Source: Fonticula alba ATCC 38817 (lineage: Eukaryota > Protista > Nucleariida). Taken from it: DNA of 49,177 nt. This document shows positions 13,304-29,133 of this stretch, one piece after another. The stretch's first letter is position 1. Each line of letters opens with the position of its first letter. Both the position numbers and the translations under genes were made by a program. The notes beneath the pieces were generated by a model. The model saw only the letters and a list, made by a program, of their open reading frames with translations. It had not been told where the DNA came from and searched no databases. The stretch is from assembly GCA_000388065.2 (NCBI GenBank), contig KB932205.1. One strand, 5' to 3'.

Positions 13304-16300
13304 ATGTCCGGTTCATATCGACCGGAGGTGGGTAAGATCGAGGGTGCCGGCGCAGAGGGCGCACCACCGCCGGGCAAGCCCCCGATCTCTGGCTCCCTTG
13401 ACGCCGAGGAGCCGGGGCGGTCGCCATCCGCCCGGCGTACGGCGCGTCCGGGACTCCTTCCACTGCGCGCGTCTGAGCGCATGTCCCCCTCGCGCACGCC
13501 CTCCCGGCGTCTGGCGCCCGGGAGCCCGCGCTCGCCGATCCAGCAGTTGGTGCAGGAGCTCCAGCGGGACACTCTGACGGATCATGACATCTATTCGCTG
13601 GCCGCGCCGGCGGGTGGGGGGCCTTTGCGCGATGGCGTTGGTGTACCCCTCGGCTGGGCATTCAGTCGGGCGGGTTTGCCCTCGCAGCGCATTTCGGGCC
13701 TCGGTGGGTGCACCTTTCCGGGACCTCCTTCGCCCCACTCCGCCGCTTGATTGTCACTGACTGCCTCTTGTCGGTTTCCCTTTCCCCTCTGTCGCCGGTC
13801 CCCTGTGCCGACCATGTAGATTCCTTCCAACTGATGCAGCAGCCCCAGTCAGACCATGGATTCCCCATGGCCGGATCCTTCTCCAGCATACCGGCTCCCC
13901 CTCCGCCGGTTCTGTTGCCCTCTTCGCGCAATGCGTCCGGCATGTCCTCCAGTTCGGTGATGGAGCAGCTGCTCCGGACGGGGGACTTCTCGTCACTTTC
14001 CTCCGCCGGAAGTGGGTCCCCCATCCCCGGCTTGCCGCAGGGCGCGAGGCCTTCCCTTTCGATGGGGGAAAAGCCGCCGCCGGCGCCCCTCTTCCTGGAC
14101 TCGCGACCGGTCGCAGCGGCCGCGGTGGCAGAACCAACAGCACCAGCAGCACCAGCAGCACCAGCAATGGCAGCGGCGTCAAAGACCACGGCGGAGACGG
14201 CGATGGCCATTGATGCGCCAGCCGTAGCAACGACCACACCCGGTGCCCCGGTGGCGCCCGGGGTTGTCCGGCCGTCGACGGCACCATGCCCGGTGTCGGA
14301 GCCCACGACCGCCGCCTCTGGCCCGGAGGAAAATGCCTGTTTGTTGCTGGTGTCGTTGATACTCTCGGTGCCGGTGGCCCGGCCGGCAGTCCGCCGGGTG
14401 CTCGATGACCTGAGCCACTTCCCGTCTGGCTTGGCCGGGCTGGCGCGGCGAATGGTCGGACGCCTGAGCACGGTCCTTGGCATGGATTTCAACCTTCCGA
14501 CGGCCCTGTTGACGGTGGCCCACCGGCACTTCGTGAATTTGGTGTCCCCCGCCTGGAACTGGCTGTTGTACCCGCTGCTCGGGGAGGCTGGACCCAATGG
14601 GCCGGTCACCGTGTCGCCGGCTTTGGCTTCCCTTTACTCGGAGCTGGCCGGGCTCCTGGAGCCATTGGCCACCATCCCCCTGGTCGGGCGTGGCTCCGAG
14701 ACCACCCCTGACGCCGAGCGTCCCGGTATGTTTCGCTGCTGGTGGGGATTTTCCCATGGCGCCGGAGGGGAGAGAGGGAAGGGGGAGGGGGGCAACCTGT
14801 CCGGCAATGGGCCCGGCAATGAGTCCGGCAATCAGTCCGAACGTCTTCCCCTGTCTCTCGCGCTTTTCTGACTGCCCCCCATCCTGGCGGTCGATATGTG
14901 GGCCCTGCGTCGATCGATGTCCGACCAGAATCACCACAGACCGACGACTGGGCGCACTGCCCGGCCACGAGGCGCGGCACACAGGCCATCCAATATCTAA
15001 TGCACCCGGGCATGCACCGGCCATTGTCACAAATGCTGTCACATGCGATGGCCGCGCAGGAGCACTTTGCCGAATCGGCCATCGGGGTGGTGGTGCTGCT
15101 GGCCCTGCGGCATGCGGCACACACGGCCGATTCGTTGGTGATGGAGTTCCCTCCTGGCATGGCGGTGTCGGCCGCCTCGCTGCCATTGATCCTCGGACAG
15201 ATCCAGCGGCGTCTGGCCACATTGCAGACGTTGGCCTTCAGTGGACTTGGAGGGCCCAGCCCGGTCGGGGTGGCCGGGTCGGCCGGGTGGTTTGCCCGGC
15301 CCTTCGCGGGGCTGGACACCAGCTCGCCGATCATGCCCGGGCTGGGCTCCTCATCACCGCCGCTGTTTCGGAGTGATGCATCGTCTCCGCGCCCGGATGG
15401 CGAGTCTCCGTCACTGCAGTCCCGGCTGCCGGCCGACCTGCGGCCAGACCCGCGGCCGGATCCCCACGACCTGGCCCTGAATGATCCCCTTGAAAGTACG
15501 AGGCTTGAGAATGGCCGAGGTCCGGACTCCCCGAGGCCGGCACTTGGCGGCCCCAGCGGGCCGGCGGCGTCCGGGGCCCCGGGGTCCCTTCCTTTGCCGG
15601 ATTTGCCGCCGGTGTCGGCTGCTGGAAATCCGCTCGATTTGCCGGCAGCCTCGACCTCCGCCGGCAGCGGGGCCGGATCCCCGCAGCCGTCCAGCCTCTT
15701 GGAGCTTACTCAGCCAACTGCCCCGGCGGCGGTGGCAGCGGCGGCCACAGGGCCCACCACTCCGGCGCATCGGCTCCATCACTCACATCATCATCGTCAT
15801 CTCGCAGGTTCTGTGCCTGGTCCTGGGGCTTCCTTGAGCTCGCTCATGGCGGCTGCCGCCAATGTCGCCGCGACACGGGTCCATGCGGCCGGCACGCCGG
15901 ATCCCCGGCCCACAGCCCAGTCGACCGCCGTGTTGGGCGGCGAGGCGGCTCTTTCCTTGGCTGGTGGGGCCGGCCGATCGACGGCCGGTGCCGAGCCGGT
16001 CAGCGAAAGCGTCGTGGTCGGCGAGTCCCCGCATCGCCAGCAGTCCGGGCCGGATGGCGTCCTGAGCGCGGCCTCGCCGTCCAGCCCGTCAGAGCCCCCT
16101 TCCACTTCCGATGGGACCCCCTTCGAAATCTTGACCTTGAACTTGAGCCCGGTGCGCGCCCGGTTTCTTCGGCCCCTCAGTAATGCCACTTCTCTGCCGG
16201 TCGGTCTGGGGGGGGGGGGGGGGAACAGAAGCGGCCACGGAAGCGCATGCACACGGAAACAGACATGGCCCATGCGCCAGATCCGGTCCTGCACCCGTGC

Positions 16301-17476
16301 CCCCGGGCTCTCTTCCACGCCCCGCTCCACATCTCGCCCTACCCAGCCAGCCCCGGGGATTGGTGTGTGCTGCTTTGGGCGGCGGTGATGGCCGCTACTG
16401 ACGTATGAGACTCAGGCTCCTGCGTGATGTCCGGGAGCATCACACCCCCGGGGCAGGGAAACTGCCTCCAGCCCCCACGGGAGGGCGGAGAGGGGGGCGG
16501 GGGCAGGGGGGGCGGGCGTCCAGCCCAGCATCGCTTCCGGGAAACCGCCACCGGTGGCTAATCACCGGCGCGCGCTCCTCGGGGGGGGGCCAACCGGGGG
16601 GGGGGGGGGGGGGGCCCACCGGGTTGCCGGTTCGCCTCCGCCTCGCTTACTGACCTCTTCCCCCCCCTCCCCCCCCCCTCTTGACATGTGGTGCGTGAAT
16701 GCGGTGGCAAAAACAAACGGACAAACAAACCAACCAACCAATATGCCCAGCTGGGCCCCGATGGCACCACCTCGCGAGTCAGTCTCTTTGGGTGTTCGAT
16801 CTGTGCCGCCGACAACCCCTACGGGCATTATTCGCCGGCGGAGTGCCCAACCAGCAGCTTCGAGTTGGTCCCCGGCACGGCAAGTGCCCTGTGCCAGGCA
16901 ACATCCCCGGGAGAGGAGGCCCGGCGCCGGGGCCATGCACCGGGCTGCATGTGTTTCTGGTTCGAGGGGACGCCACAGCTGGCGGACCATCTGATCAATG
17001 TCCACCTCCGGCGGCTGAAGGGCCGGCCGGGGCTGGAGGCCATCTCGGCTGCCGATGAGCTGGCAGATGCCGACAGCTGGCCGGCCACTCCGGGGGCCTT
17101 GTCTCCGCGGGCGGCGCTGGACTCCAATACCAGTGTGCACACGCGGCCGCCGCCATTGCCGCCGGCCCTGATCCGATCCCTTCGGGACCCGGAGCGCGAG
17201 GAGCTGAAGGCCAAGTCCTCGGTGTCCTCGACGGTGGTGCTGTCCAAATCACGGGAGAGCTTCGGCCAGGCGCTGCCACAGCTGCGGTACATCAGTCGGT
17301 TCCAGTGCTGCTTTGCCAATTGCTCGTACGTGGCCCAGTCCGATCGGCGGTTCCTGCTCGTGACGCACCTGCGCAAGCACTTCCCCTCGGCGGCCTTCAA
17401 GTGCCCGATCTGTTCGCAGTCCTACCGCCACTCGCAGAGCCTGCGCAAGCATATGCGCCGCGCGCATGACATGTGA
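13304..17476 (+). CDS. Large Ser/Pro-rich C2H2 zinc-finger protein (putative transcription factor), 4 exons, about 1063 aa
   Basis: Exons 13304-13640, 13820-14725, 14929-16151, 16751-17476 join in frame (3192 nt), with CTGAC branch-like sites before the acceptors. C-terminal tandem fingers FQCCFANCSYVAQSDRRFLLVTHLRKH and FKCPICSQSYRHSQSLRKHMRRAH. The start codon and the exon 3-4 junction are inferred. Confidence 0.75.
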
Positions 17477-20619: not shown

Positions 20620-23600
20620 ATGTCGACTCCCCCCGATGCCGAGGCCTCGGCTGCCCAGCCGGCGGCCTCCGTCCTGATCGCCGTGATCCTCCCCAAGCGG
20701 TCGATCCGGAAGACCTTCCGCTTTGACCCGGTGCGTGTGTCGTCTACACCTGTGGCCCGCCCCCCCCACCCAACTCTCGCATGGTTCCTGCCCCCTGGCC
20801 GGGGTGGGTCTTTTTTTTTGCTCCGGCTTGAGCCCCCTTCCTCCCTCTCGCTCCTGCCTCTTTCTCTCTCTCTCTCTCTCTCTCCCCTCCCTTCCATTGA
20901 CACGAGGGGCCATGTGGACAGAACAAAAGCATCTTCGAGATCAAGAGCGAGCTGCCGGAGAAGCTCGGCCTGGGAAACCTCGGCCGCCCAGCCGCCGGGG
21001 CCTCCGTCAAGTGGGCCTCCTCCAGCCCGGATGACGATCAACTCATCAACCCGGCCAATTACGGGCTCCTGGAGATCCACGGCTCCAAGGGGTCTGGCGC
21101 GTACTTCCTGGATGACCGACGCCAGCTGGGCGCGTACAACTTCCCAGACAGCGTGCGCCCCCTCCTGCCCTCCTCAAGCCTGGGATCGGCTCTTGATGCA
21201 TTCATTCCACATGGACTTCTCTCTCTCTCCCTCTCTCGCCCTGACCGGTGTGTGTCGCCTGCGGCCCGAAGACGGCTCTGGAGTTTGTGCCCAAGCGGCG
21301 CTTTGCCTCGGAGAAGGAGTTCCAGCTGAATGCCAAAAACAACACCCGACGCAATCAGAAGGCTCTCATCGAGGCGGTCATGGCCAAGAGCATTCGCAAG
21401 ACGCGCGAGCTCCTGGACAAGGGTCTCGATCCGAACTTCACCTTCGAGAATGGAGGTGCGTCTGATGCTGCGCGCCGACTCACGAATGCCCCGGCCACAG
21501 CCCTCGCCCCGCCTCTCCTTCCCCTCTGCCGCCGGAAAAATCCCCGGCACGCCCCTTCGGAGGCCCTTAAATTTTACACAGCCCGTGCTCCTCCTTCGCC
21601 ATTCCGAGCTCACACTTACACTCCCTGTGTTCTGTCGACGCGGGCGCGCCTCCCCCCCCCCTCCTCCCTCCCGAAGAAACCCCCCTCGCGGTGGCCGCGG
21701 CCAATGACGACACCGAGATGATCTTGCTGCTGGTGCAGCAGGGCGGTGCACATCTGGACTATTTCTGCGCCACCGACGGCCGGACCCCCCTGCATCGGGC
21801 GGCGCAGCGCGCGGCCACCCGAGCAACCTCCCTGCTGATGGACCTGGCAGCGGCCAAGAGCAGCACCGCCCCGGGCGTGGCCTTCCCCGATCGCCCAATC
21901 CAGCCGCTGCATTCACTGCCATCGCTCGGGTCCGGGGCCACCCCGCTGCTGGATGCCTGCACGGCCGGGTGTGTTGGCAGTGTTCGGGCCCTCCTGGAGG
22001 CCGGAGCCCGGCCAAGCGTCCAGCGCCAGGTGACCGACCTCTCGCAGCCCATCATCCCGGATAACACCCCTCGCGCGGCGCCGGCCCACAACCCGGCCTA
22101 TCTGGGGGAGCTCCATGCCGCCTGCCACAGCAGCAGTCACGAAGTGGTGGAGTTGCTGCTCGGGCCGCCGGGGCTGGCTGACCCGGACGTCACCAATGAG
22201 ACTGGCAACACGCCGATGCACGTGTGTGCCATTGGCAACCAACGCGAGTGTCTGCAGCATCTGATGCGTGCCGGTGCGCCTTACTTTCGGCCTCTTCCCC
22301 CTCTCTCCTCTCTCTCCTCTCTCTCNNNNNNNNNNNNNNNNNNNNNNNNNNNNNNNNNNNNNNNNNNNNNNNNNNNNNNNNNNNNNNNNNNNNNNNNNNN
22401 NNNNNNNNNNNNNNNNNNNNNNNNNNNNNNNNNNNNNNNNNNNNNNNNNNNNNNNNNNNNNNNNNNNNNNNNNNNNNNNNNNNNNNNNNNNNNNNNNNNN
22501 NNNNNNNNNNNNNNNNNNNNNNNNNNNNNNNNNNNCCTCTCTCTCCCCTCTCTCTCCCCTCTCTCTCCCCTGTTTCCCCCTCGTTATCCTTCGCTCGCTC
22601 GCTTGGCGCGCACATCATCCCTGCCGTGTCTTCCATCAGTTGCGCTGACGCATCCCCCCCCCCTCTCCCCCGCTGTCGTCCAGGTTGCGTGCGGAATTTC
22701 ACCAACCGCGCACATAGCACCGCCGCACAGACCGCTGTGACGTGCGGGTTTTTCTCCATTTCCACCACTATCGCCTCTTTCAAGGATTCGGATATTGGTG
22801 CGCACATGGATGCCAGCACCCGGTCGCCCGGCACTGGGCCTGTCTCCAGCGCCTTCTCCGTTGGCCGCACCCGAATGCTCCCTAACACTGTTCTCCCCGT
22901 CCCTTCCCCCTTTCTCTTCCCCTCCCCCCTCCGCCTCCCTCCTTGTTCAAATGTTGCGCGTCGCTCTGCCGCAGTTCCTCTCAGCAATTTCGGCTCGGCT
23001 GGGGGCGCGATCGGCGTGGCCGGTGCGACCGGGGCCCGCCACTCGGACACGTCGGCCGGCGGGAGTCCGGCTCTCTCGATCAACACCAGCGAGGGCATCG
23101 CCCGGTCCGGGTCATCGGATTCATTGAAGAGCCTGGCCAGCTCGTTGGGCGAGTCCACCGGGACGACGCTCTTCATCCCGCCCCCGCCGCCGGCCGGCTT
23201 CGTCGGGATCTGTCCACCGGGCGACGGGGCCCCCCTCCTGCGGAAGGTGGTGTCATTGGAGCCGCCCCCCATGCCGCCTGGTGCGGCCGACGCCGACCTG
23301 TCCACCGGGGCCTCCTCTGTCGGGCTGTCGTCGTCGTCGTCGTCATCGCCGCCATCGTCATCTTCATTCCAGACGACTCCGCCGCCGGTCGCCGGGTTCG
23401 CCGCTCCGCCACCCGTGGCCGGGTCTCCGGTTGGGTTTGGCGGTCCGCCGCCATCGGTGTCCACCGCCGCACCTCCGAGTGGGTTTGGGGCGCCGCCGCC
23501 GATGGGCGGGCCTCCTGCCGGGTTTGGGGCGCCGCCGGGGTTCGGCGGTCCACCGCCGCCGGTGTCCACCACGCCGACCACCCCCGGTGGGAGCTTCGCG

Positions 23601-23759
23601 CCTCCGCCGCTGGGCTTCGCTCGGCCGCCGCCCTCGCCTCAGACCCCCAACTCAGAAATGTCCTTCGCCGCGGCCGGCGGCCCGCCCGGGCAGTTCGGCA
23701 AGCCCCCCTCGCGCATGGCCCGGTCTGCCCCGCCGCCTCCGCCACAGGCGCACTCTTAG
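20620..23759 (+). CDS. Shank-like scaffold: SPN (ubiquitin-like) domain + 6 ankyrin repeats + Ser/Pro-rich tail, 6 exons, 673 aa
   Basis: Exons 20620-20730, 20922-21152, 21272-21455, 21677-22273, 22684-22797, 22975-23759 join in frame (2022 nt). Shank-like blocks: KTFRFDP, NYGLL...FLDDRRQLGAY, ALEFVPKRR, LLDKGLDPNF..GETPLAVAA, GGAHLDY...DGRTPLHRAA, NETGNTPMHVCAI, FKDSDIVP. Confidence 0.88.
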
Positions 23760-24609
23760 CACGCGCGTGCGTGTGCGCGCGCGTTTGTGTGTGTGTGTGT
23801 GTATATCTGTATGTATCTGCATCTGTATGCGTCTTCGCTCCTCGTTGTTTCGCACGCGTGTTTGCACATGCACACGCCGGAAAGCCGGCGACGCACCCCC
23901 CCCCCCCCTTCTTGCCTCCCTTCCTCTCTCTGGGGGTATTTTTTTTCACTCAGCAGCACAGGCCAGGTGGCCGAGCCGTGTGAAGGAGCCAGATACACCG
24001 AGGGGCGGGGGCGAGGCAGCATACACATTTCCCCACCACTTTCATGAGCCAATCGTTTGGTGTTTACGGTCTTCTTGTCTGTCGGGGCCGCGGTGTGCCC
24101 CGCGGAGAAAGGGCGGGAGGAGAGGGGCTGCAGGTGGCTCCGAAACACACGTTCGGGGTGCGCGCCCGCTCGGTCGAAGCCCAGGGGCCCGCTTTGGGAG
24201 GGGAGGGTGGGGGACGTGTCTCGCATGCCGCGTCCGTTGGTAGCAATGTCCTGACCGCCGCCAGACTGCCACCAGTCGGGACGACGGCCGGGGAACCCCG
24301 CCCTGAGGACCGGCCCGGGGCCAGCCACAGGCGTGAACTATTTCCCACCCCGCCCGGGGCTCCAGCTCCTGGTGGGCAGACAGCCCAACCTGAGCACCCC
24401 TTTTCCCCGCCTGCGCCTCCCGCTCGAGCGCTGCTCCTCCCCCCNNNNNNNNNNNNNNNNNNNNNNNNNNNNNNNNNNNNNNNNNNNNNNNNNNNNNNNN
24501 NNNNNNNNNNNNNNNNNNNNNNNNNNNNNNNNNNNNNNNNNNNNNNNNNNNNNNNNNNNNNNNNNNNNNNNNNNNNNNNNNNNNCCCCCGCCTCCCCCGT
24601 TCCGCCGCC

Positions 24610-25559
24610 ATGCGCCCCGTCTCGACGAACAGCGTGCTTCTGGCACTCGCCGTGATGCTGCTGCACGTTCTGGCTCTGGCCTCGGCTACCGCGGTGGCCG
24701 ATCAGCCGGTCACCTGCGGCAGTAGCATCAAGCTGTTGCACACTCAGACCAAGGGGCAGCTTCACTCGATGGACATCAAATACAACACCGGCAGCATGCA
24801 GCAGGTGGTGACCGCATACCCTGGGACGGCCGGCCTGGGGTCCGGCCCCGGGCCGCACCCGGGATCCTACTGGCTTGTGGAGGGCCCGCTGGGTCGGGCC
24901 TGCCCGCGCGGCACGCCGGTTCCCTGCGGTAGCCAGATCCGGCTGAAGCATGCCCTCACGTCGACTCGACTGCACTCGCACCTGCACCGGTATGTGGGCT
25001 TTGCCTCCTTTCGTTGCCGTGGCTTGGGCGCCCGCATGTTCGCACGTCTGTCCCTGCCTTGCTCGGCCAGCCCTTCTAACCCCCCTCTGCCCCGCCCCCT
25101 GCCCCGCCCTCTGCCCCGCCCTCTGCCCAGGTCACCCATCTCCTCCACTCAGGAGGTGTCGGCTTTTGCACATCCCTCCCTGCCGGAGGGGGACTCCGGG
25201 GACGTGTGGGTCGTCGAGTGCTCGGTCAAGCACAAGTTCTGGCCCCGCGATCAAATTGTGCGTGGCTCCCATTTCCTACCGGCTCCTTTTGCGCTGCCTC
25301 CTCCTTCTTCTAGGGCAACCCCCCCCCCCCGGGGGGAGCATGGCCTTATCATCTGACTACCGTTTGCTGACTTGCACGATATTGTGCGCCTGTGCAGGTC
25401 CGCCTGATGCACCATGACACGGGGAGCTTCCTGGCCTCCAATGCACGCTACCAGTATGGACACCCGATCCCCGGTCAGATGGAGGTGTCGGCCACCACCA
25501 GCAAGAACAATGACCTCCACTGGATGGCCACTGAGGGGATTTACATCCCGCCCAACTGA
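24610..25559 (+). CDS. SDF2: Stromal cell-derived factor 2-like ER protein (3 MIR domains), 3 exons, 222 aa
   Basis: Exons 24610-24989, 25131-25257, 25398-25559 join in frame (669 nt). Signal peptide, VTCGSSIKL, LHSMDIKYNTGSMQQVVT, CGSQIRLKH, LHSH...QEVSAF, GDSGDVW, WMATEGIY. Confidence 0.93.
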
Positions 25560-26012: not shown

Positions 26013-27902
26013 TCACTCCGAGAGGTCCGGCGACTCGGGATCCGAGTCAACTGCCGTCTCGATCTTGGTCTCGTCCACCGTGCCCGGAACATCATCTAAG
26101 GATGAGGCAAGGTGGCAGTGAGTAAGTGGGATGGAGTGAAGGAAGGAGAGGAAAAGAGAAAGAGAGGTGGATAGAGAGGGAGGGAGGGAGAGAGAGGGAG
26201 AGGGAGAGGGAGAGGATCGCCTACGCACCGGAGTCCAGCGTCCCGGTTTCCGGGTATTGATGAAGGTCATCCGAGAGATACTGACTGGAGGGAGTCGTAG
26301 ACGCGGAGATGGTATCGGTGTCATCGGCCACCGACTCGCCGGCCGATCCGGGGGAAGTACCGGCGGCCGCCCGGCGCAGATCGGCCAGCTCGCGCTCGGC
26401 CGCGGCAATCTTCTTGCGCAAGTCGAAGGTGGCATTGTTCCAGATGTTGATCCGGTGGCTTGGGCCCCAGGTGGGCTTGTAGCCGCCGGGAGTCTGAACG
26501 CACGGGACAAACAAATCCAACGCCAAGGGCTCCTCCTCGAAGGGGGCATACATCTCGCGCCAGAAGCGGATCCCATGGGGAGCCGTCTGGGGGAGGAGGA
26601 TGCGCGGGGCGTCGGCCGAGCCGCGACCGGCCATCGGGTCCAAGCTCGCCGGGGCCTGGTAAAACTGGTTGGTGTAGACGAAGTCCAGCCAGTCGGATGT
26701 CGGCCACAGGAGCTCGGCCCAGGCTGAGGGCGATCCGGTGGGCAGCCCATGCTGGTGGCGCTCGCGCTCGCAATTGAACAGGAAGGTCCCACTGTCACAG
26801 CCGACCACCTTGCTCCAGAGCGCCCGAAGCCAGGTCCCGGTGAACTCGAAAGACTGGGGATACTGCTGGCTCAACTGCCACACGGCCTCCAGGAACTGGA
26901 TGAACACCGGGCTCACCTCCGAATACTGGGAGCTGGCCTTGCCATAGACACTGTGGCCAATGCGGTGGGCAAACTTGTGCCCGGCCGCCAGCCACTCCTT
27001 CTCCACCAGCACGGCAAAGCCACGCCGGGTTCGGTAGTACGGATCGAGGCACACCTCGGCTAGGCCGGCCAGCTGGGCCGTCCGGTCCCACCCGTCCGAG
27101 CAGTGGACCAGGATGCTCCCGCCATCCAACACATAGCGGACCATCTTCAGCGTGCCGCGCATGATGATTTGCATGTGCTTGAGCCACCCGCTGCTGTCCA
27201 GGGCGCCATACCAGCCGGAGATGCTTTGATCCGATTGCAGGACTCCTGCAAGGGGGGAACGAGACACGAGGCATTAGTCGGGGAAAGGGCCAGACAGACC
27301 CGGCAAGCATGGCCTCGACGCACCGGCAAGCAGCTTGTCCAGCGACTCGCGCATGACATGAATGTTGTCGATGCCCAGGAACTCGCGCGTGCAGTTTTGG
27401 TAGAAGTCCGGCTGCTCGAACCCCTTGCCCATGGCGGCATTGGCAATGGCATTGACCCGGGGCCGGGCGTCGACGATGTGGTTCTGCGTGCCAGTCGCCC
27501 CACCGGGCAGGGTGAACCCGGGCAGGCGCTGCGCGCGGTCCTTCTCGGCCGCCGAGAAGTACATTGACACGAGGGTCTCGTCGGCGGTCGAGCGCTTGCC
27601 CACACTGGCCAGCCCGGCCAGAGGCTGGCTGCTTCGAGAAATGGAGGCCTAGCCGGGCGGAGGGAGGGTCAGCCGAGGCAGGGACACGGGGCGCGAAGGC
27701 GGCGGGGAGTGTTGGCAAGGCATATGGACGCACTCCATTCGGCAGATACAGGTAGCTGAGGATTGGCAGCCGGCAGCGACTGCGGAACTTGGCCGCCCCC
27801 TCGAGGATGGCATCGCTGGCCTCGGCAGGCACGGCGATGACCTTGGGATATGTGTCGCAGAGCTGGTGTGTGTGTGTGTGTGCGCGTGTGTGTGTGCGTG
27901 TG

Positions 27903-27944
<42 letters not shown>

Positions 27945-29133
27945 AGAAAAAGGGGGGTGCGCGGGTGTAAAGCATGAGGCGCAGCGAGGACGCGGTCAGC
28001 AGGGCAGCGCGGGGAGGAAGAGCGGCGGAGTGGCGCCCAGCATGAAGGACAGCCAGGTACACGCACACTGTACTCGTCGTTGAGGCTGGAAATGCGCCAC
28101 ATCTTGGACACGGTCTCGACGCCCATGCGGCGATATTCGCTGTGGGGATCGTAGATCTTCCAGCCCTCATCAAAGGTGCCGGTAGGGGTGACATGGCCGG
28201 CACGCGGAGTGCCGCCATCGGACTGGGCCAGCGCTGGGTAGTTTTGGAAGGAGGCTGTGGCACGGCAGCAGGGACAGGCGATTAGCATGTGGCCAGTGGA
28301 AGAGAAGGCCAGACAGGCGGCCCACACAAAAGGGGGCACACATACCGGGTCGATAGCTGATCAGCGTCTGGTAAAAGTTCTCCCGGTCCACGCCATCCGG
28401 CAGGATGATCGAGTAGACCAGGTAGTCCCGCGAGTGGATGGTGATGATGTAGTGCCGGTCGGCGGACTTGGATCCGTCGTTGGGGCTCTTGCTGCGCGAG
28501 GTGATGTGGAACATCTTGGTGTAGAGGATCTGCCGGCGCAGGGGGAACGATTCGCAGTGGTGGCGGTGGCAGCGGCGGTGGTGGAAAGACAAGCGGAGGC
28601 AGGTGAGGCAAGGGTCACACGAGAAGGAGAGCGAGAGGGAGGGAGGGGGGAAGGGGAGGGAGGGGGAAAAGGGGGGAGGAGGGAGACACACCTTCGCATG
28701 GTAGTTGGGAGAGATGAAGGAAAGATGGTGCCGGTTCAGCAAGAGCGTCCCCTTGGCCAGGGGATGCTTGGAGAGGGGGTTTCGGAAGAAAAAGACATCA
28801 TCAACCTGCGAACAACCATAACCCGGGTCAGCTGGGAAGAGAAGGCGGAGCGTGTTTGGAAGGGGAAAAAAAGAGGGAGCAGCAAACCAACGGGAGCCAG
28901 AGACATTGCAGGCATCAGGNNNNNNNNNNNNNNNNNNNNNNNNNNNNNNNNNNNNNNNNNNNNNNNNNNNNNNNNNNNNNNNNNNNNNNNNNNNNNNNNN
29001 NNNNNNNNNNNNNNNNNNNNNNNNNNNNNNNNNNNNNNNNNNNNNNNNNNNNNNNGCGGACCTGGGTGACGGGCAGAAAGTCCGAGAGATCTCGCAGGGA
29101 GGAGTTCTTCCGGAACTTGTCCCGAAAGGCCAT
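26013..29133 (-). CDS. Myotubularin-family phosphoinositide 3-phosphatase (catalytically intact), 8 exons, about 703 aa
   Basis: Exons 29133-29062, 28805-28692, 28529-28346, 28254-28067, 27862-27734, 27648-27324, 27245-26229, 26095-26013 join in frame (2112 nt). PH-GRAM-like N-terminus, LCDTYP, FRSRCRLP, SRSSQPL, IVDARP, NIHVMRES, active site VHCSDGWDRT, EKEWLAAGHKF, GTFLFNCERER, short C-terminal coiled coil. One intron contains a gap. Confidence 0.93.
27866..27940. repeat. (TG)n/(TGCG) microsatellite in a myotubularin intron
   Basis: Directly visible interrupted TG run. Confidence 0.9.

What the first reader, a model, noticed from the sequence alone, without database searches (positions are those of the whole stretch)
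20620..23759. Minimal proto-Shank in an apparently unicellular eukaryote: SPN + 6 ANK, no SH3/PDZ/SAM
Seen: six exons splice in frame to a 673-aa protein whose N-terminal part follows animal Shank block by block (SPN, then LLDKGLDPNF...GETPL, GGAHLDY, GNTPMHVC, ...DSDIVP). After the sixth ankyrin repeat it goes straight into a Ser/Pro-rich tail and stops. The 210-N gap lies in a phase-compatible intron between ankyrin repeats, so it should not hide the missing domains. Known: animal Shanks are SPN-ANK-SH3-PDZ-PRR-SAM synaptic scaffolds whose SPN domain binds Ras/Rap GTPases. Inference: this may be an ancestral or reduced SPN-ANK module that works outside synapses.
Basis: partly seen in the sequence, partly recalled or inferred. 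Interest (0 to 1): 0.75.

Follow-up and report, generated by a model that had tools for sequence, protein, structure and literature searches.

The report
Shank-like SPN-ankyrin scaffold of Fonticula
A slime-mould relative of fungi carries a true relative of the front end of the animal synapse scaffold Shank, without its SH3, PDZ and SAM domains, and the same short form occurs across zoosporic fungi, so this module is older than animals and their closest relatives.

Summary
The window is Fonticula alba scaffold KB932205.1. The six GT-AG exons give 673 codons and match the public model H696_03653 exon for exon.

The N gap lies inside intron 4. 78 homologues align across that junction with no extra column, so no exon seems hidden.

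The N-terminal 420 residues are homologous to the Shank SPN-ankyrin module:
- Shank3 is the best specific hit among solved structures, by sequence (profile E 6e-15) and by fold (Foldseek E 2e-21, TM 0.81-0.85).
- Two introns share position and phase with sponge and cnidarian Shank genes.
- The model has seven ankyrin repeats, not six.

No SH3, PDZ or SAM is encoded anywhere in the window.

The protein is not a one-off. 21 chytrid and blastoclad proteins share the SPN-ANK plus Pro-rich-tail layout. Creolimax and Pigoraptor proteins add SH3. Choanoflagellates and animals add PDZ and SAM.

Function as a Ras/Rap-binding scaffold is inferred. Fonticula keeps the Lys of Shank3 K22 but has Ala where Shank3 has R12.

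I found no paper describing these holomycotan proteins, although two NCBI records are already auto-named Shank.

The parts
20620..20730 (+). Exon 1 (residues 1-37): short leader, then SPN strands beta1 and beta2. The codon for A21 (20680-20682) sits in the Shank3 R12 column. The codon for K31 (20710-20712) sits in the K22 column.
20922..21152 (+). Exon 2 (residues 38-114): SPN helix and core, with the Shank motifs NYGL and FLDDRR, and a low-confidence loop at residues 55-80.
21272..21455 (+). Exon 3 (residues 115-176): last SPN strand (LEFVPKRR), the SPN-ANK linker and ankyrin repeat 1 (LLDKGLDPNF). It ends in phase 1, at an intron position shared with fungal homologues and with sponge and cnidarian Shank.
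21677..22273 (+). Exon 4 (residues 176-375): ankyrin repeats 2-6. Two disordered loop inserts lie at residues 240-260 (21868-21930) and 292-315 (22024-22095).
22274..22683 (+). Intron 4 (phase 1, found only in Fonticula among the six genes compared). It contains the assembly gap 22326-22535, flanked by CT repeats.
22684..22797 (+). Exon 5 (residues 375-413): ankyrin repeat 7. It ends in phase 1, at a second intron position shared with fungi, Nematostella and Sycon.
22975..23759 (+). Exon 6 (residues 413-673 plus TAG): tail of 22% Pro, 16% Ser and 15% Gly with no Pfam domain (the fold model ends at residue 420, so its disorder is inferred from composition). Five PPxxF motifs lie at 23187, 23472, 23511, 23604 and 23682. 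Residues 477-515 (23166-23282) are shared with the unnamed relative P0134.

Best explanation
Gene H696_03653 of Fonticula alba encodes the holomycotan counterpart of the N-terminal half of Shank.

Shown:
- A ubiquitin-like SPN (talin-F0 / Ras-association type) domain is predicted to pack against seven ankyrin repeats, as in the closed Shank3 SPN-ARR crystal structures.
- A 260-residue Pro/Ser/Gly-rich tail with no recognisable domain follows, and then the protein stops.
- It belongs to a family found in chytrids, blastoclads, Fonticula and an unnamed lineage. All members have SPN-ANK plus a Pro-rich tail and none has SH3, PDZ or SAM.
- Ichthyosporean and Pigoraptor relatives have SPN-ANK-SH3. 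Choanoflagellates and animals also have PDZ and SAM.

Inferred origin: the SPN-ANK module was present in the opisthokont ancestor, and Shank proper arose in Holozoa by adding domains to it.

Inferred function, by analogy with Shank3: a cytoplasmic scaffold whose SPN face binds GTP-loaded Ras/Rap-type GTPases, whose ankyrin platform binds protein partners, and whose proline-rich tail recruits SH3, EVH1/WH1 or profilin-type actin regulators.
For: Gene model: it equals the public protein, exon by exon.

Sequence:
- Shank3 N-terminus scores E 3e-33, colinear over residues 78-236 against Shank3 47-209.
- Residues 1-180 have Shank3 as their top PDB hit, E 2e-9.
- The two-sequence profile scores 58.7 bits, E 6e-15, in two colinear stretches that cover SPN strand 1 through ankyrin repeat 1.
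- Pfam FERM_f0 scores 25.3 bits.
- The atlas feature search puts a Shank3 cluster first, score 0.94.

Exhaustive HMMER search: 131 hits, about 109 of them colinear SPN+linker+ANK1. The nearest named hits are all zoosporic fungi.

Conservation: 58 of the 74 columns that are at least 80% conserved in the family are kept in Fonticula.

Structure: pLDDT 83.6, pTM 0.83. The Foldseek top four are 6kyk, 6kyh and 5g4x, with TM 0.81-0.85 over about 410 columns.

Tree: the fungal clade has support 96 and the holozoan clade 95. Holding Fonticula with the fungi gives lnL 4.26 higher than the free search (p-AU 0.62).

Introns: two positions and phases are shared with Nematostella and Sycon Shank. The chance of that is about 1e-3.

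Domain absence.
Against: - No transcript evidence could be obtained, so the junctions, and intron 4 in particular, rest on homology.
- Fonticula is the most divergent member (end branch 1.59). It has Ala where Shank3 has R12, a Ras-contact residue that is Arg or Lys in 20 of 21 fungal relatives. It also lacks several near-invariant residues (R205F, G233A, D240A, G340P).
- Pfam FERM_f0 is below its curated cut-off (25.3 against 26.9 bits).
- The AlphaFold alignment contained Shanks, and the Shank3 crystals predate the network's training, so the closed arrangement may be partly recalled.
- The tree is unrooted and has no non-opisthokont member, so loss of SH3/PDZ/SAM in Holomycota is not excluded.
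- No binding was tested.
Confidence: 0.8

Rival explanations
1. Secondary reduction. The opisthokont ancestor had a full SPN-ANK-SH3-PDZ-SAM Shank, and the stem of Holomycota lost the three C-terminal domains. Fonticula would then carry a reduced form, not an ancestral one.
For: The tree is unrooted. The SPN-ANK-SH3 proteins of Creolimax and Pigoraptor come from gene or transcript models whose completeness was not checked. Domain loss is common.
Against: Every one of the 21 fungal members, Fonticula and P0134 lacks all three domains. The holozoan grades follow the species tree: SH3 only in Creolimax and Pigoraptor, PDZ and SAM only from choanoflagellates on. No non-opisthokont full-length Shank appeared among the 131 HMMER hits.
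Confidence: 0.15
2. Truncated or mis-split gene model. The real gene continues into SH3, PDZ and SAM exons that are hidden in the assembly gap or lie downstream.
For: The window has 15 N gaps, one inside this gene and one (24445-24584) just downstream. There is no transcript check.
Against: HMMs built from Shank SH3, PDZ and SAM find nothing in six frames of the whole window. The best hit is E 0.026, inside the Dus gene 6.6 kb away. The positive control scored 1e-38. The in-gene gap lies between two residues that are adjacent in 78 homologues. The downstream genes encode MIR and myotubularin proteins. In Blastocladiella the next genes lie on the other strand.
Confidence: 0.03
3. An unrelated ubiquitin-like plus ankyrin protein (ANKUB1, ANKRD40 or talin-F0 type) that resembles Shank only through generic folds.
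For: Ubiquitin chains also match the profile (E 1e-11, summed over repeats). ANKRD40 and ANKUB1 clusters appear at 0.88-0.90 in the atlas feature search. Generic ankyrins outscore Shank3 when the whole 420 residues are used.
Against: The match to Shank3 is colinear through the linker, which is not a generic element (LEF.YKRR, HTK.N.K, KGLDPNF). Alie and Manuel found this N-terminal region similar to no other protein (PMC2824662). Two intron positions are shared with Shank genes. Foldseek separates Shank3 from all other chains by ten orders of magnitude.
Confidence: 0.02

Closest known systems
Animal Shank/ProSAP (Shank1-3); N-terminal SPN-ARR fragment of Shank3 (PDB 5g4x, 6kyk, 6kyh)
   Same: - SPN ubiquitin-like domain, linker and seven ankyrin repeats, colinear at 29-30% identity and with the same predicted closed packing.
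- Shared motifs NYGL, FLD.xR, LEF.xKRR and KGLDPNF.
- Two shared intron positions.
- The Lys of the K22 Ras contact is kept.
- A proline-rich region follows the folded part.
   Different: - No SH3, PDZ or SAM.
- 673 aa, against 1500-2300 aa.
- Ala at the R12 Ras-contact column.
- Two long disordered loops inserted in repeats 3-4 and 4-5.
- It lies outside the holozoan Shank clade.
- The organism has no synapses.
SPN-ANK proteins of zoosporic fungi, for example Blastocladiella emersonii H9P43_007078, Allomyces javanicus KAJ3354519.1 and Chytriomyces hyalinus KAJ3237822.1 (the last two auto-named 'SH3 and multiple ankyrin repeat domains protein 2'), and Rhizophlyctis, Geranomyces and Synchytrium proteins (UniProt 'Talin N-terminal F0 domain-containing protein')
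   Same: - The same architecture and size class (597-886 aa).
- 33% identity over residues 12-415 to the Blastocladiella emersonii protein.
- Three shared intron positions.
- Pro-rich tails.
- The best-likelihood tree joins them with Fonticula.
   Different: - The fungal proteins keep Arg or Lys at the R12 column.
- They end in a conserved coiled-coil-like segment that Fonticula lacks.
- They lack Fonticula's PPxxF repeats, apart from a few.
Talin F0 / Pfam FERM_f0 (PF16511)
   Same: The same ubiquitin-like fold class and a Rap1-binding precedent. Pfam's closest family for the N-terminus.
   Different: No FERM F1-F3 or rod follows. The score is below the curated cut-off. The linker and ankyrin repeats are Shank-type, not talin-type.

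Membership tests
Shank/ProSAP | N-terminal SPN (ubiquitin-like, Ras-association type) domain | tested here: met
   The profile hits Shank3 residues 6-55 and 50-143 (E 6e-15) and the isolated SPN chain 7c7i (E 9e-6). The model has a beta-beta-alpha-beta-beta fold at residues 18-121. It superposes within the Shank3 NTD-ANK matches.
Shank/ProSAP | Ankyrin repeat region of seven repeats directly after SPN, joined by the Shank-specific linker | tested here: met
   Colinear alignment of residues 78-236 to Shank3 47-209. Seven helix pairs. Target-normalised TM 0.85 to 5g4x.
Shank/ProSAP | SH3 domain | tested here: not met
   No Pfam SH3 in P0001. No SH3 signal in six frames of the window.
Shank/ProSAP | PDZ domain | tested here: not met
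Shank/ProSAP | C-terminal SAM domain | tested here: not met
   The protein ends in Pro-rich sequence.
Shank/ProSAP | Proline-rich region with a Homer (PPxxF) or cortactin binding site | tested here: inconclusive
   The tail has five PPxxF motifs, against 0.66 expected from shuffles. They lie in an internally repetitive PP.GFG.PP tract, and no binding was tested.
Shank/ProSAP | Ras/Rap contact residues R12 and K22 of SPN (PMC11393128) | tested here: inconclusive
   The K22 column is K31, kept. The R12 column is A21, not kept. Other basic residues lie nearby (K26, R27, R30, R34).
Shank/ProSAP | Placement inside the clade of animal and choanoflagellate Shanks | tested here: not met
   It is excluded from the 54-row holozoan clade (SH-aLRT 95) and groups best with the fungal proteins. 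This is what the species tree predicts for a holomycotan orthologue of the ancestral module.
Holomycotan SPN-ANK family (not described in any paper found in the searched library) | SPN + linker + seven ANK + Pro-rich tail, no SH3/PDZ/SAM, and a phase-0 intron before the last SPN strand | tested here: met
Pfam FERM_f0 (PF16511) | Score at or above the curated cut-off of 26.9 bits | tested here: not met
   25.3 bits for residues 1-140 and 19.0 bits for the whole protein. 30 of 46 family members match at E<=0.001.

The most novel reading that the evidence does not exclude
The SPN-ankyrin module is an opisthokont-wide, pre-synaptic Ras/Rap-binding scaffold. It was the seed of Shank: SH3 was added in early Holozoa, and PDZ and SAM in the ancestor of choanoflagellates and animals. 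In Holomycota it survives, as far as the named hits show, only in lineages that keep amoeboid or flagellated cells (Fonticula, chytrids, blastoclads). There it couples small-GTPase signals to actin assembly through its proline-rich tail.
Probability: 0.45. Interest if true: 0.7.

Novelty: new variant of a known kind. Interest (0 to 1): 0.6.

Why it matters
[quoted passage not shown] Its N-terminal region was reported to resemble no other protein (PMC2824662).

The data here move the SPN-ANK half back to the opisthokont ancestor. They also lay out a stepwise series of domain additions across living lineages.

This makes one question testable in tractable non-animal systems, such as the transformable chytrid Spizellomyces and culturable Fonticula. 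The question is whether Ras/Rap sequestration by SPN, known from Shank3 in integrin and KRAS signalling, is the ancestral job of the scaffold and predates any synaptic role.

Tried and rejected
- Exon 2 alone against PDB sequences gave only chance hits. Exons 1, 2, 3, 5 and 6 alone gave no Pfam family.
- The word search with the 1-420 region gave one true relative (Blastocladiella) and otherwise generic ankyrin proteins.
- The word search with the 79-sequence family profile was swamped by generic ankyrin proteins and gave no new member or name.
- The intron figure of Alie and Manuel is held only as images. I derived intron positions from genomic loci instead.
- I first assumed that the gap intron matched the fungal phase-1 intron. 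The alignment showed that the E5/E6 intron is the shared one, and that intron 4 is specific to Fonticula.
- A WH2-like LLRKV in the tail was considered. It is not supported by Pfam and is absent from most relatives.
- Paper searches for Shank together with Fonticula, chytrids, Holomycota, Allomyces and others found nothing relevant.
Exons were searched by reference. Whole-protein work used the public protein P0001. One script compared neighbouring exon pairs with P0001 and printed coordinates only.
Full report
**What is there**

The region 20620-23759 (+ strand) holds six exons:
- E1 20620-20730
- E2 20922-21152
- E3 21272-21455
- E4 21677-22273
- E5 22684-22797
- E6 22975-23759

Every intron is GT-AG with the donor gtgcg. 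The exons end in phases 0, 0, 1, 1 and 1. Their sum is 2022 nt, which is 673 codons and a TAG.

A word search with the tail frame returned a public protein of exactly 673 aa, P0001. It is the hypothetical protein H696_03653 of Fonticula alba. Each exon's whole-codon translation is found in it at contiguous positions. Single residues (176, 375, 413) fall at the three split codons.

The window is therefore scaffold KB932205.1 of assembly GCA_000388065.2. Fonticula is a rotosphaerid opisthokont: an amoeba that aggregates into fruiting bodies, on the fungal side of the animal-fungus split.

Exons were searched by reference. Whole-protein work used the public protein. One script compared neighbouring exon pairs with that protein to fix the splice sites, and printed coordinates only.

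**The assembly gap**

The N run 22326-22535 lies inside intron 4 (22274-22683). It is 52 nt after the donor and 148 nt before the acceptor, between CT-microsatellite flanks. The reading frame does not have to be continuous across the N run. It is set by the phases of exons 4 and 5.

In an alignment of 79 family members, no sequence has a residue between Fonticula residues 374 and 376 other than the column of residue 375. The split codon g|gt gives Gly, which is Gly in 97% of the other members.

In the five homologous genes whose DNA I fetched, the coding sequence is uninterrupted at this point. A hidden exon is therefore very unlikely. The true intron length remains unknown.

**Is it Shank-like? 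Sequence**

- Exon 3 alone (61 aa) has rat Shank3 residues 88-144 as its best PDB hit. That stretch is the end of SPN, the linker and the first ankyrin repeat.
- Residues 1-180 give Shank3 at E 2e-9, ahead of designed ankyrins.
- Residues 1-420 give Shank3 at E 3e-33, with one colinear stretch of residues 78-236 against Shank3 47-209. Only the 24-repeat ankyrins score higher, and they add up many repeat matches.
- A two-sequence profile (Fonticula plus its Blastocladiella relative) raises Shank3 to 58.7 bits, E 6e-15, in two colinear pieces that begin at SPN strand 1. The same profile also hits the isolated SPN chain 7c7i.
- Pfam's nearest family for the N-terminus is FERM_f0, at 25.3 bits. 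That is just under the cut-off of 26.9.
- The motifs NYGL, FLDDRR, LEFVPKRR and KGLDPNF match those in the published alignment of human, fly, annelid, sea anemone and Monosiga Shank N-termini. The authors found that region similar to no other protein (PMC2824662).

**Is it Shank-like? Structure**

An AlphaFold2 model of residues 1-420, built with the 79-row alignment, has mean pLDDT 83.6 and pTM 0.83. It shows:
- a beta-grasp at residues 18-121;
- seven ankyrin helix pairs;
- two disordered loop inserts, at residues 240-260 and 292-315.

Foldseek against the PDB puts the four Shank3 NTD-ANK chains first (6kyk A and B, 6kyh, 5g4x). They score E 2e-21 to 9e-21, with target-normalised TM 0.81-0.85 over about 410 columns. 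The next hits are generic ankyrins at E 1e-11, covering about 260 columns.

The closed SPN-on-ANK packing may be partly recalled by the network, so I treat it as supportive rather than independent.

**Relatives**

An exhaustive HMMER search of 1.84 billion representatives, using the SPN+linker+ANK1 profile, gave 131 hits. About 109 of them carry the colinear module.

The nearest named hits are all zoosporic fungi:
- Blastocladiomycota: Blastocladiella britannica and B. emersonii, Allomyces javanicus, Sorochytrium and Coelomomyces.
- Chytridiomycota: Phlyctochytrium, Rhizophlyctis, Blyttiomyces, Geranomyces, Synchytrium, Fimicolochytrium, Siphonaria, Chytriomyces and Nowakowskiella.

Two of these are auto-named 'SH3 and multiple ankyrin repeat domains protein 2' at NCBI. 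Several are named 'Talin N-terminal F0 domain-containing protein' at UniProt.

Domain content across the family:
- None of the 21 proteins of this clade has SH3, PDZ or SAM. Neither does Fonticula, nor the unnamed transcript P0134.
- Creolimax (Ichthyosporea) and Pigoraptor proteins are F0-ANK-SH3.
- Choanoflagellate proteins carry PDZ. The one from Salpingoeca urceolata also carries SH3 and SAM.
- Sponge and other animal proteins are SH3-PDZ-SAM.

**Tree and introns**

A maximum-likelihood tree of the SPN-ANK region (79 rows, 419 columns) gives:
- a fungal clade (SH-aLRT 96);
- a holozoan clade holding all but one of the SH3/PDZ/SAM-bearing proteins (SH-aLRT 95); the exception, Creolimax P0208 (SH3), falls outside it on a long branch with P0131;
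- Fonticula on a long branch (1.59) between these two clades.

Holding Fonticula with the fungi gives a tree 4.26 log-likelihood units better than the free quick search, with p-AU 0.62. The gene tree thus agrees with the species tree. It is unrooted.

Intron mapping used exact exon chaining. Two Fonticula introns fall in the same alignment column and phase in Blastocladiella, Allomyces, Synchytrium, Nematostella and Sycon:
- phase 1 in G176 of G|ETPL;
- phase 1 in V413 at the end of the ankyrin region.

A third intron (phase 0, after residue 114) is shared only with the three fungi. Introns 1 and 4 are Fonticula's own. Two or more coincidences by chance have a probability of about 1e-3.

Together, the tree and the introns argue for vertical descent of one ancestral gene.

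**Absence of the other Shank domains**

HMMs built from Shank SH3, PDZ and SAM segments find nothing in the six-frame translation of all 49 kb. The control profile scored 1e-38 on the gene.

The downstream neighbours are a MIR-domain gene (24610-25559, +) and a myotubularin-related gene (26013-29133, -). In Blastocladiella the downstream genes lie on the other strand.

**How it probably works**

Shown: the fold, the family, and the lack of SH3, PDZ and SAM.

Inferred from Shank3: SPN binds GTP-loaded Ras and Rap through R12 and K22, and the R12E/K22D double mutant abolishes binding (PMC11393128).

In the family alignment:
- The K22 column is Lys in more than 90% of the other members, and is Lys (K31) in Fonticula.
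- The R12 column is Arg or Lys in 20 of 21 fungal proteins, but Ala (A21) in Fonticula.

GTPase binding is therefore a reasonable expectation for the fungal proteins. It is uncertain for Fonticula, which has other basic residues nearby.

The tail is 22% Pro and carries five PPxxF motifs, against 0.66 expected from shuffles. These lie in an internally repetitive tract. The fungal tails carry long polyproline runs instead. This fits recruitment of EVH1/WH1, SH3 or profilin-type partners, but it is not evidence of it.

An unchecked note of this scan says that Fonticula has a Homer-like EVH1 protein with Asn at the Gly89 position. I did not test it.

**Novelty**

Searches of the paper library for Shank together with Fonticula, chytrids, Holomycota, Allomyces and related terms found nothing relevant. 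The literature I read places the origin of Shank at, or just before, the choanoflagellate-animal ancestor.

The proteins themselves are public, and some are auto-annotated, so the sequences are not new. What is new is the reading:
- a holomycotan SPN-ANK family homologous to the Shank N-terminus;
- shared introns with animal Shank genes;
- a graded series of domain additions across opisthokonts.

I class it as a new variant of a known kind, of moderate to good interest.

Noticed in passing
L002, L004, L005 (fungal loci); proteins P0002, P0122, P0124, P0127, P0132, P0133, P0144 and others: The fungal SPN-ANK proteins end in a conserved helical, coiled-coil-like segment of 40-70 residues. Examples are P0002 against P0122 (50% identity over 40 aa) and P0127 against P0144 (E 3e-10). 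Fonticula has no such segment. It might serve self-association, as SAM does in Shank.
   Followed up: partly
window 23166-23282 (residues 477-515): This tail segment is 51% identical over 39 aa to the tail of P0134, an unnamed complete 458-aa ORF on a 1490-nt contig of run SRR31152999 (locus L007). The shared motif is IPPxPPAGxVGI...RKV. P0134 and four fragments (P0152, P0234, P0246, P0249) form an unidentified lineage that includes Fonticula's highest-identity match (38% to P0134).
   Followed up: partly
L005:5986-6975 (-), Allomyces javanicus: A Ras-family GTPase gene (Pfam Ras, Roc; 196 aa) lies tail to tail directly beside the SPN-ANK gene. This may be chance.
   Followed up: no
proteins P0208 (Creolimax fragrantissima), P0145 (Pigoraptor chileana), P0154: These holozoan proteins are F0-ANK-SH3 only, at 559-666 aa. 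That is an intermediate architecture between the holomycotan form and full Shank. The completeness of the models was not verified.
   Followed up: partly
protein P0153 (Salpingoeca urceolata): The domain order is SPN-ANK-PDZ ... SH3-SAM, which differs from the animal order ANK-SH3-PDZ-SAM.
   Followed up: no
window 20731-22974 (the five introns): All five donors read gtgcg, and the introns are rich in CT and poly-C tracts. The in-gene assembly gap is flanked by (CT)n, so the microsatellite probably caused the gap.
   Followed up: partly
window 13304-17476 (+): The upstream neighbour is a called gene of 1084 aa with no Pfam hit on record.
   Followed up: no
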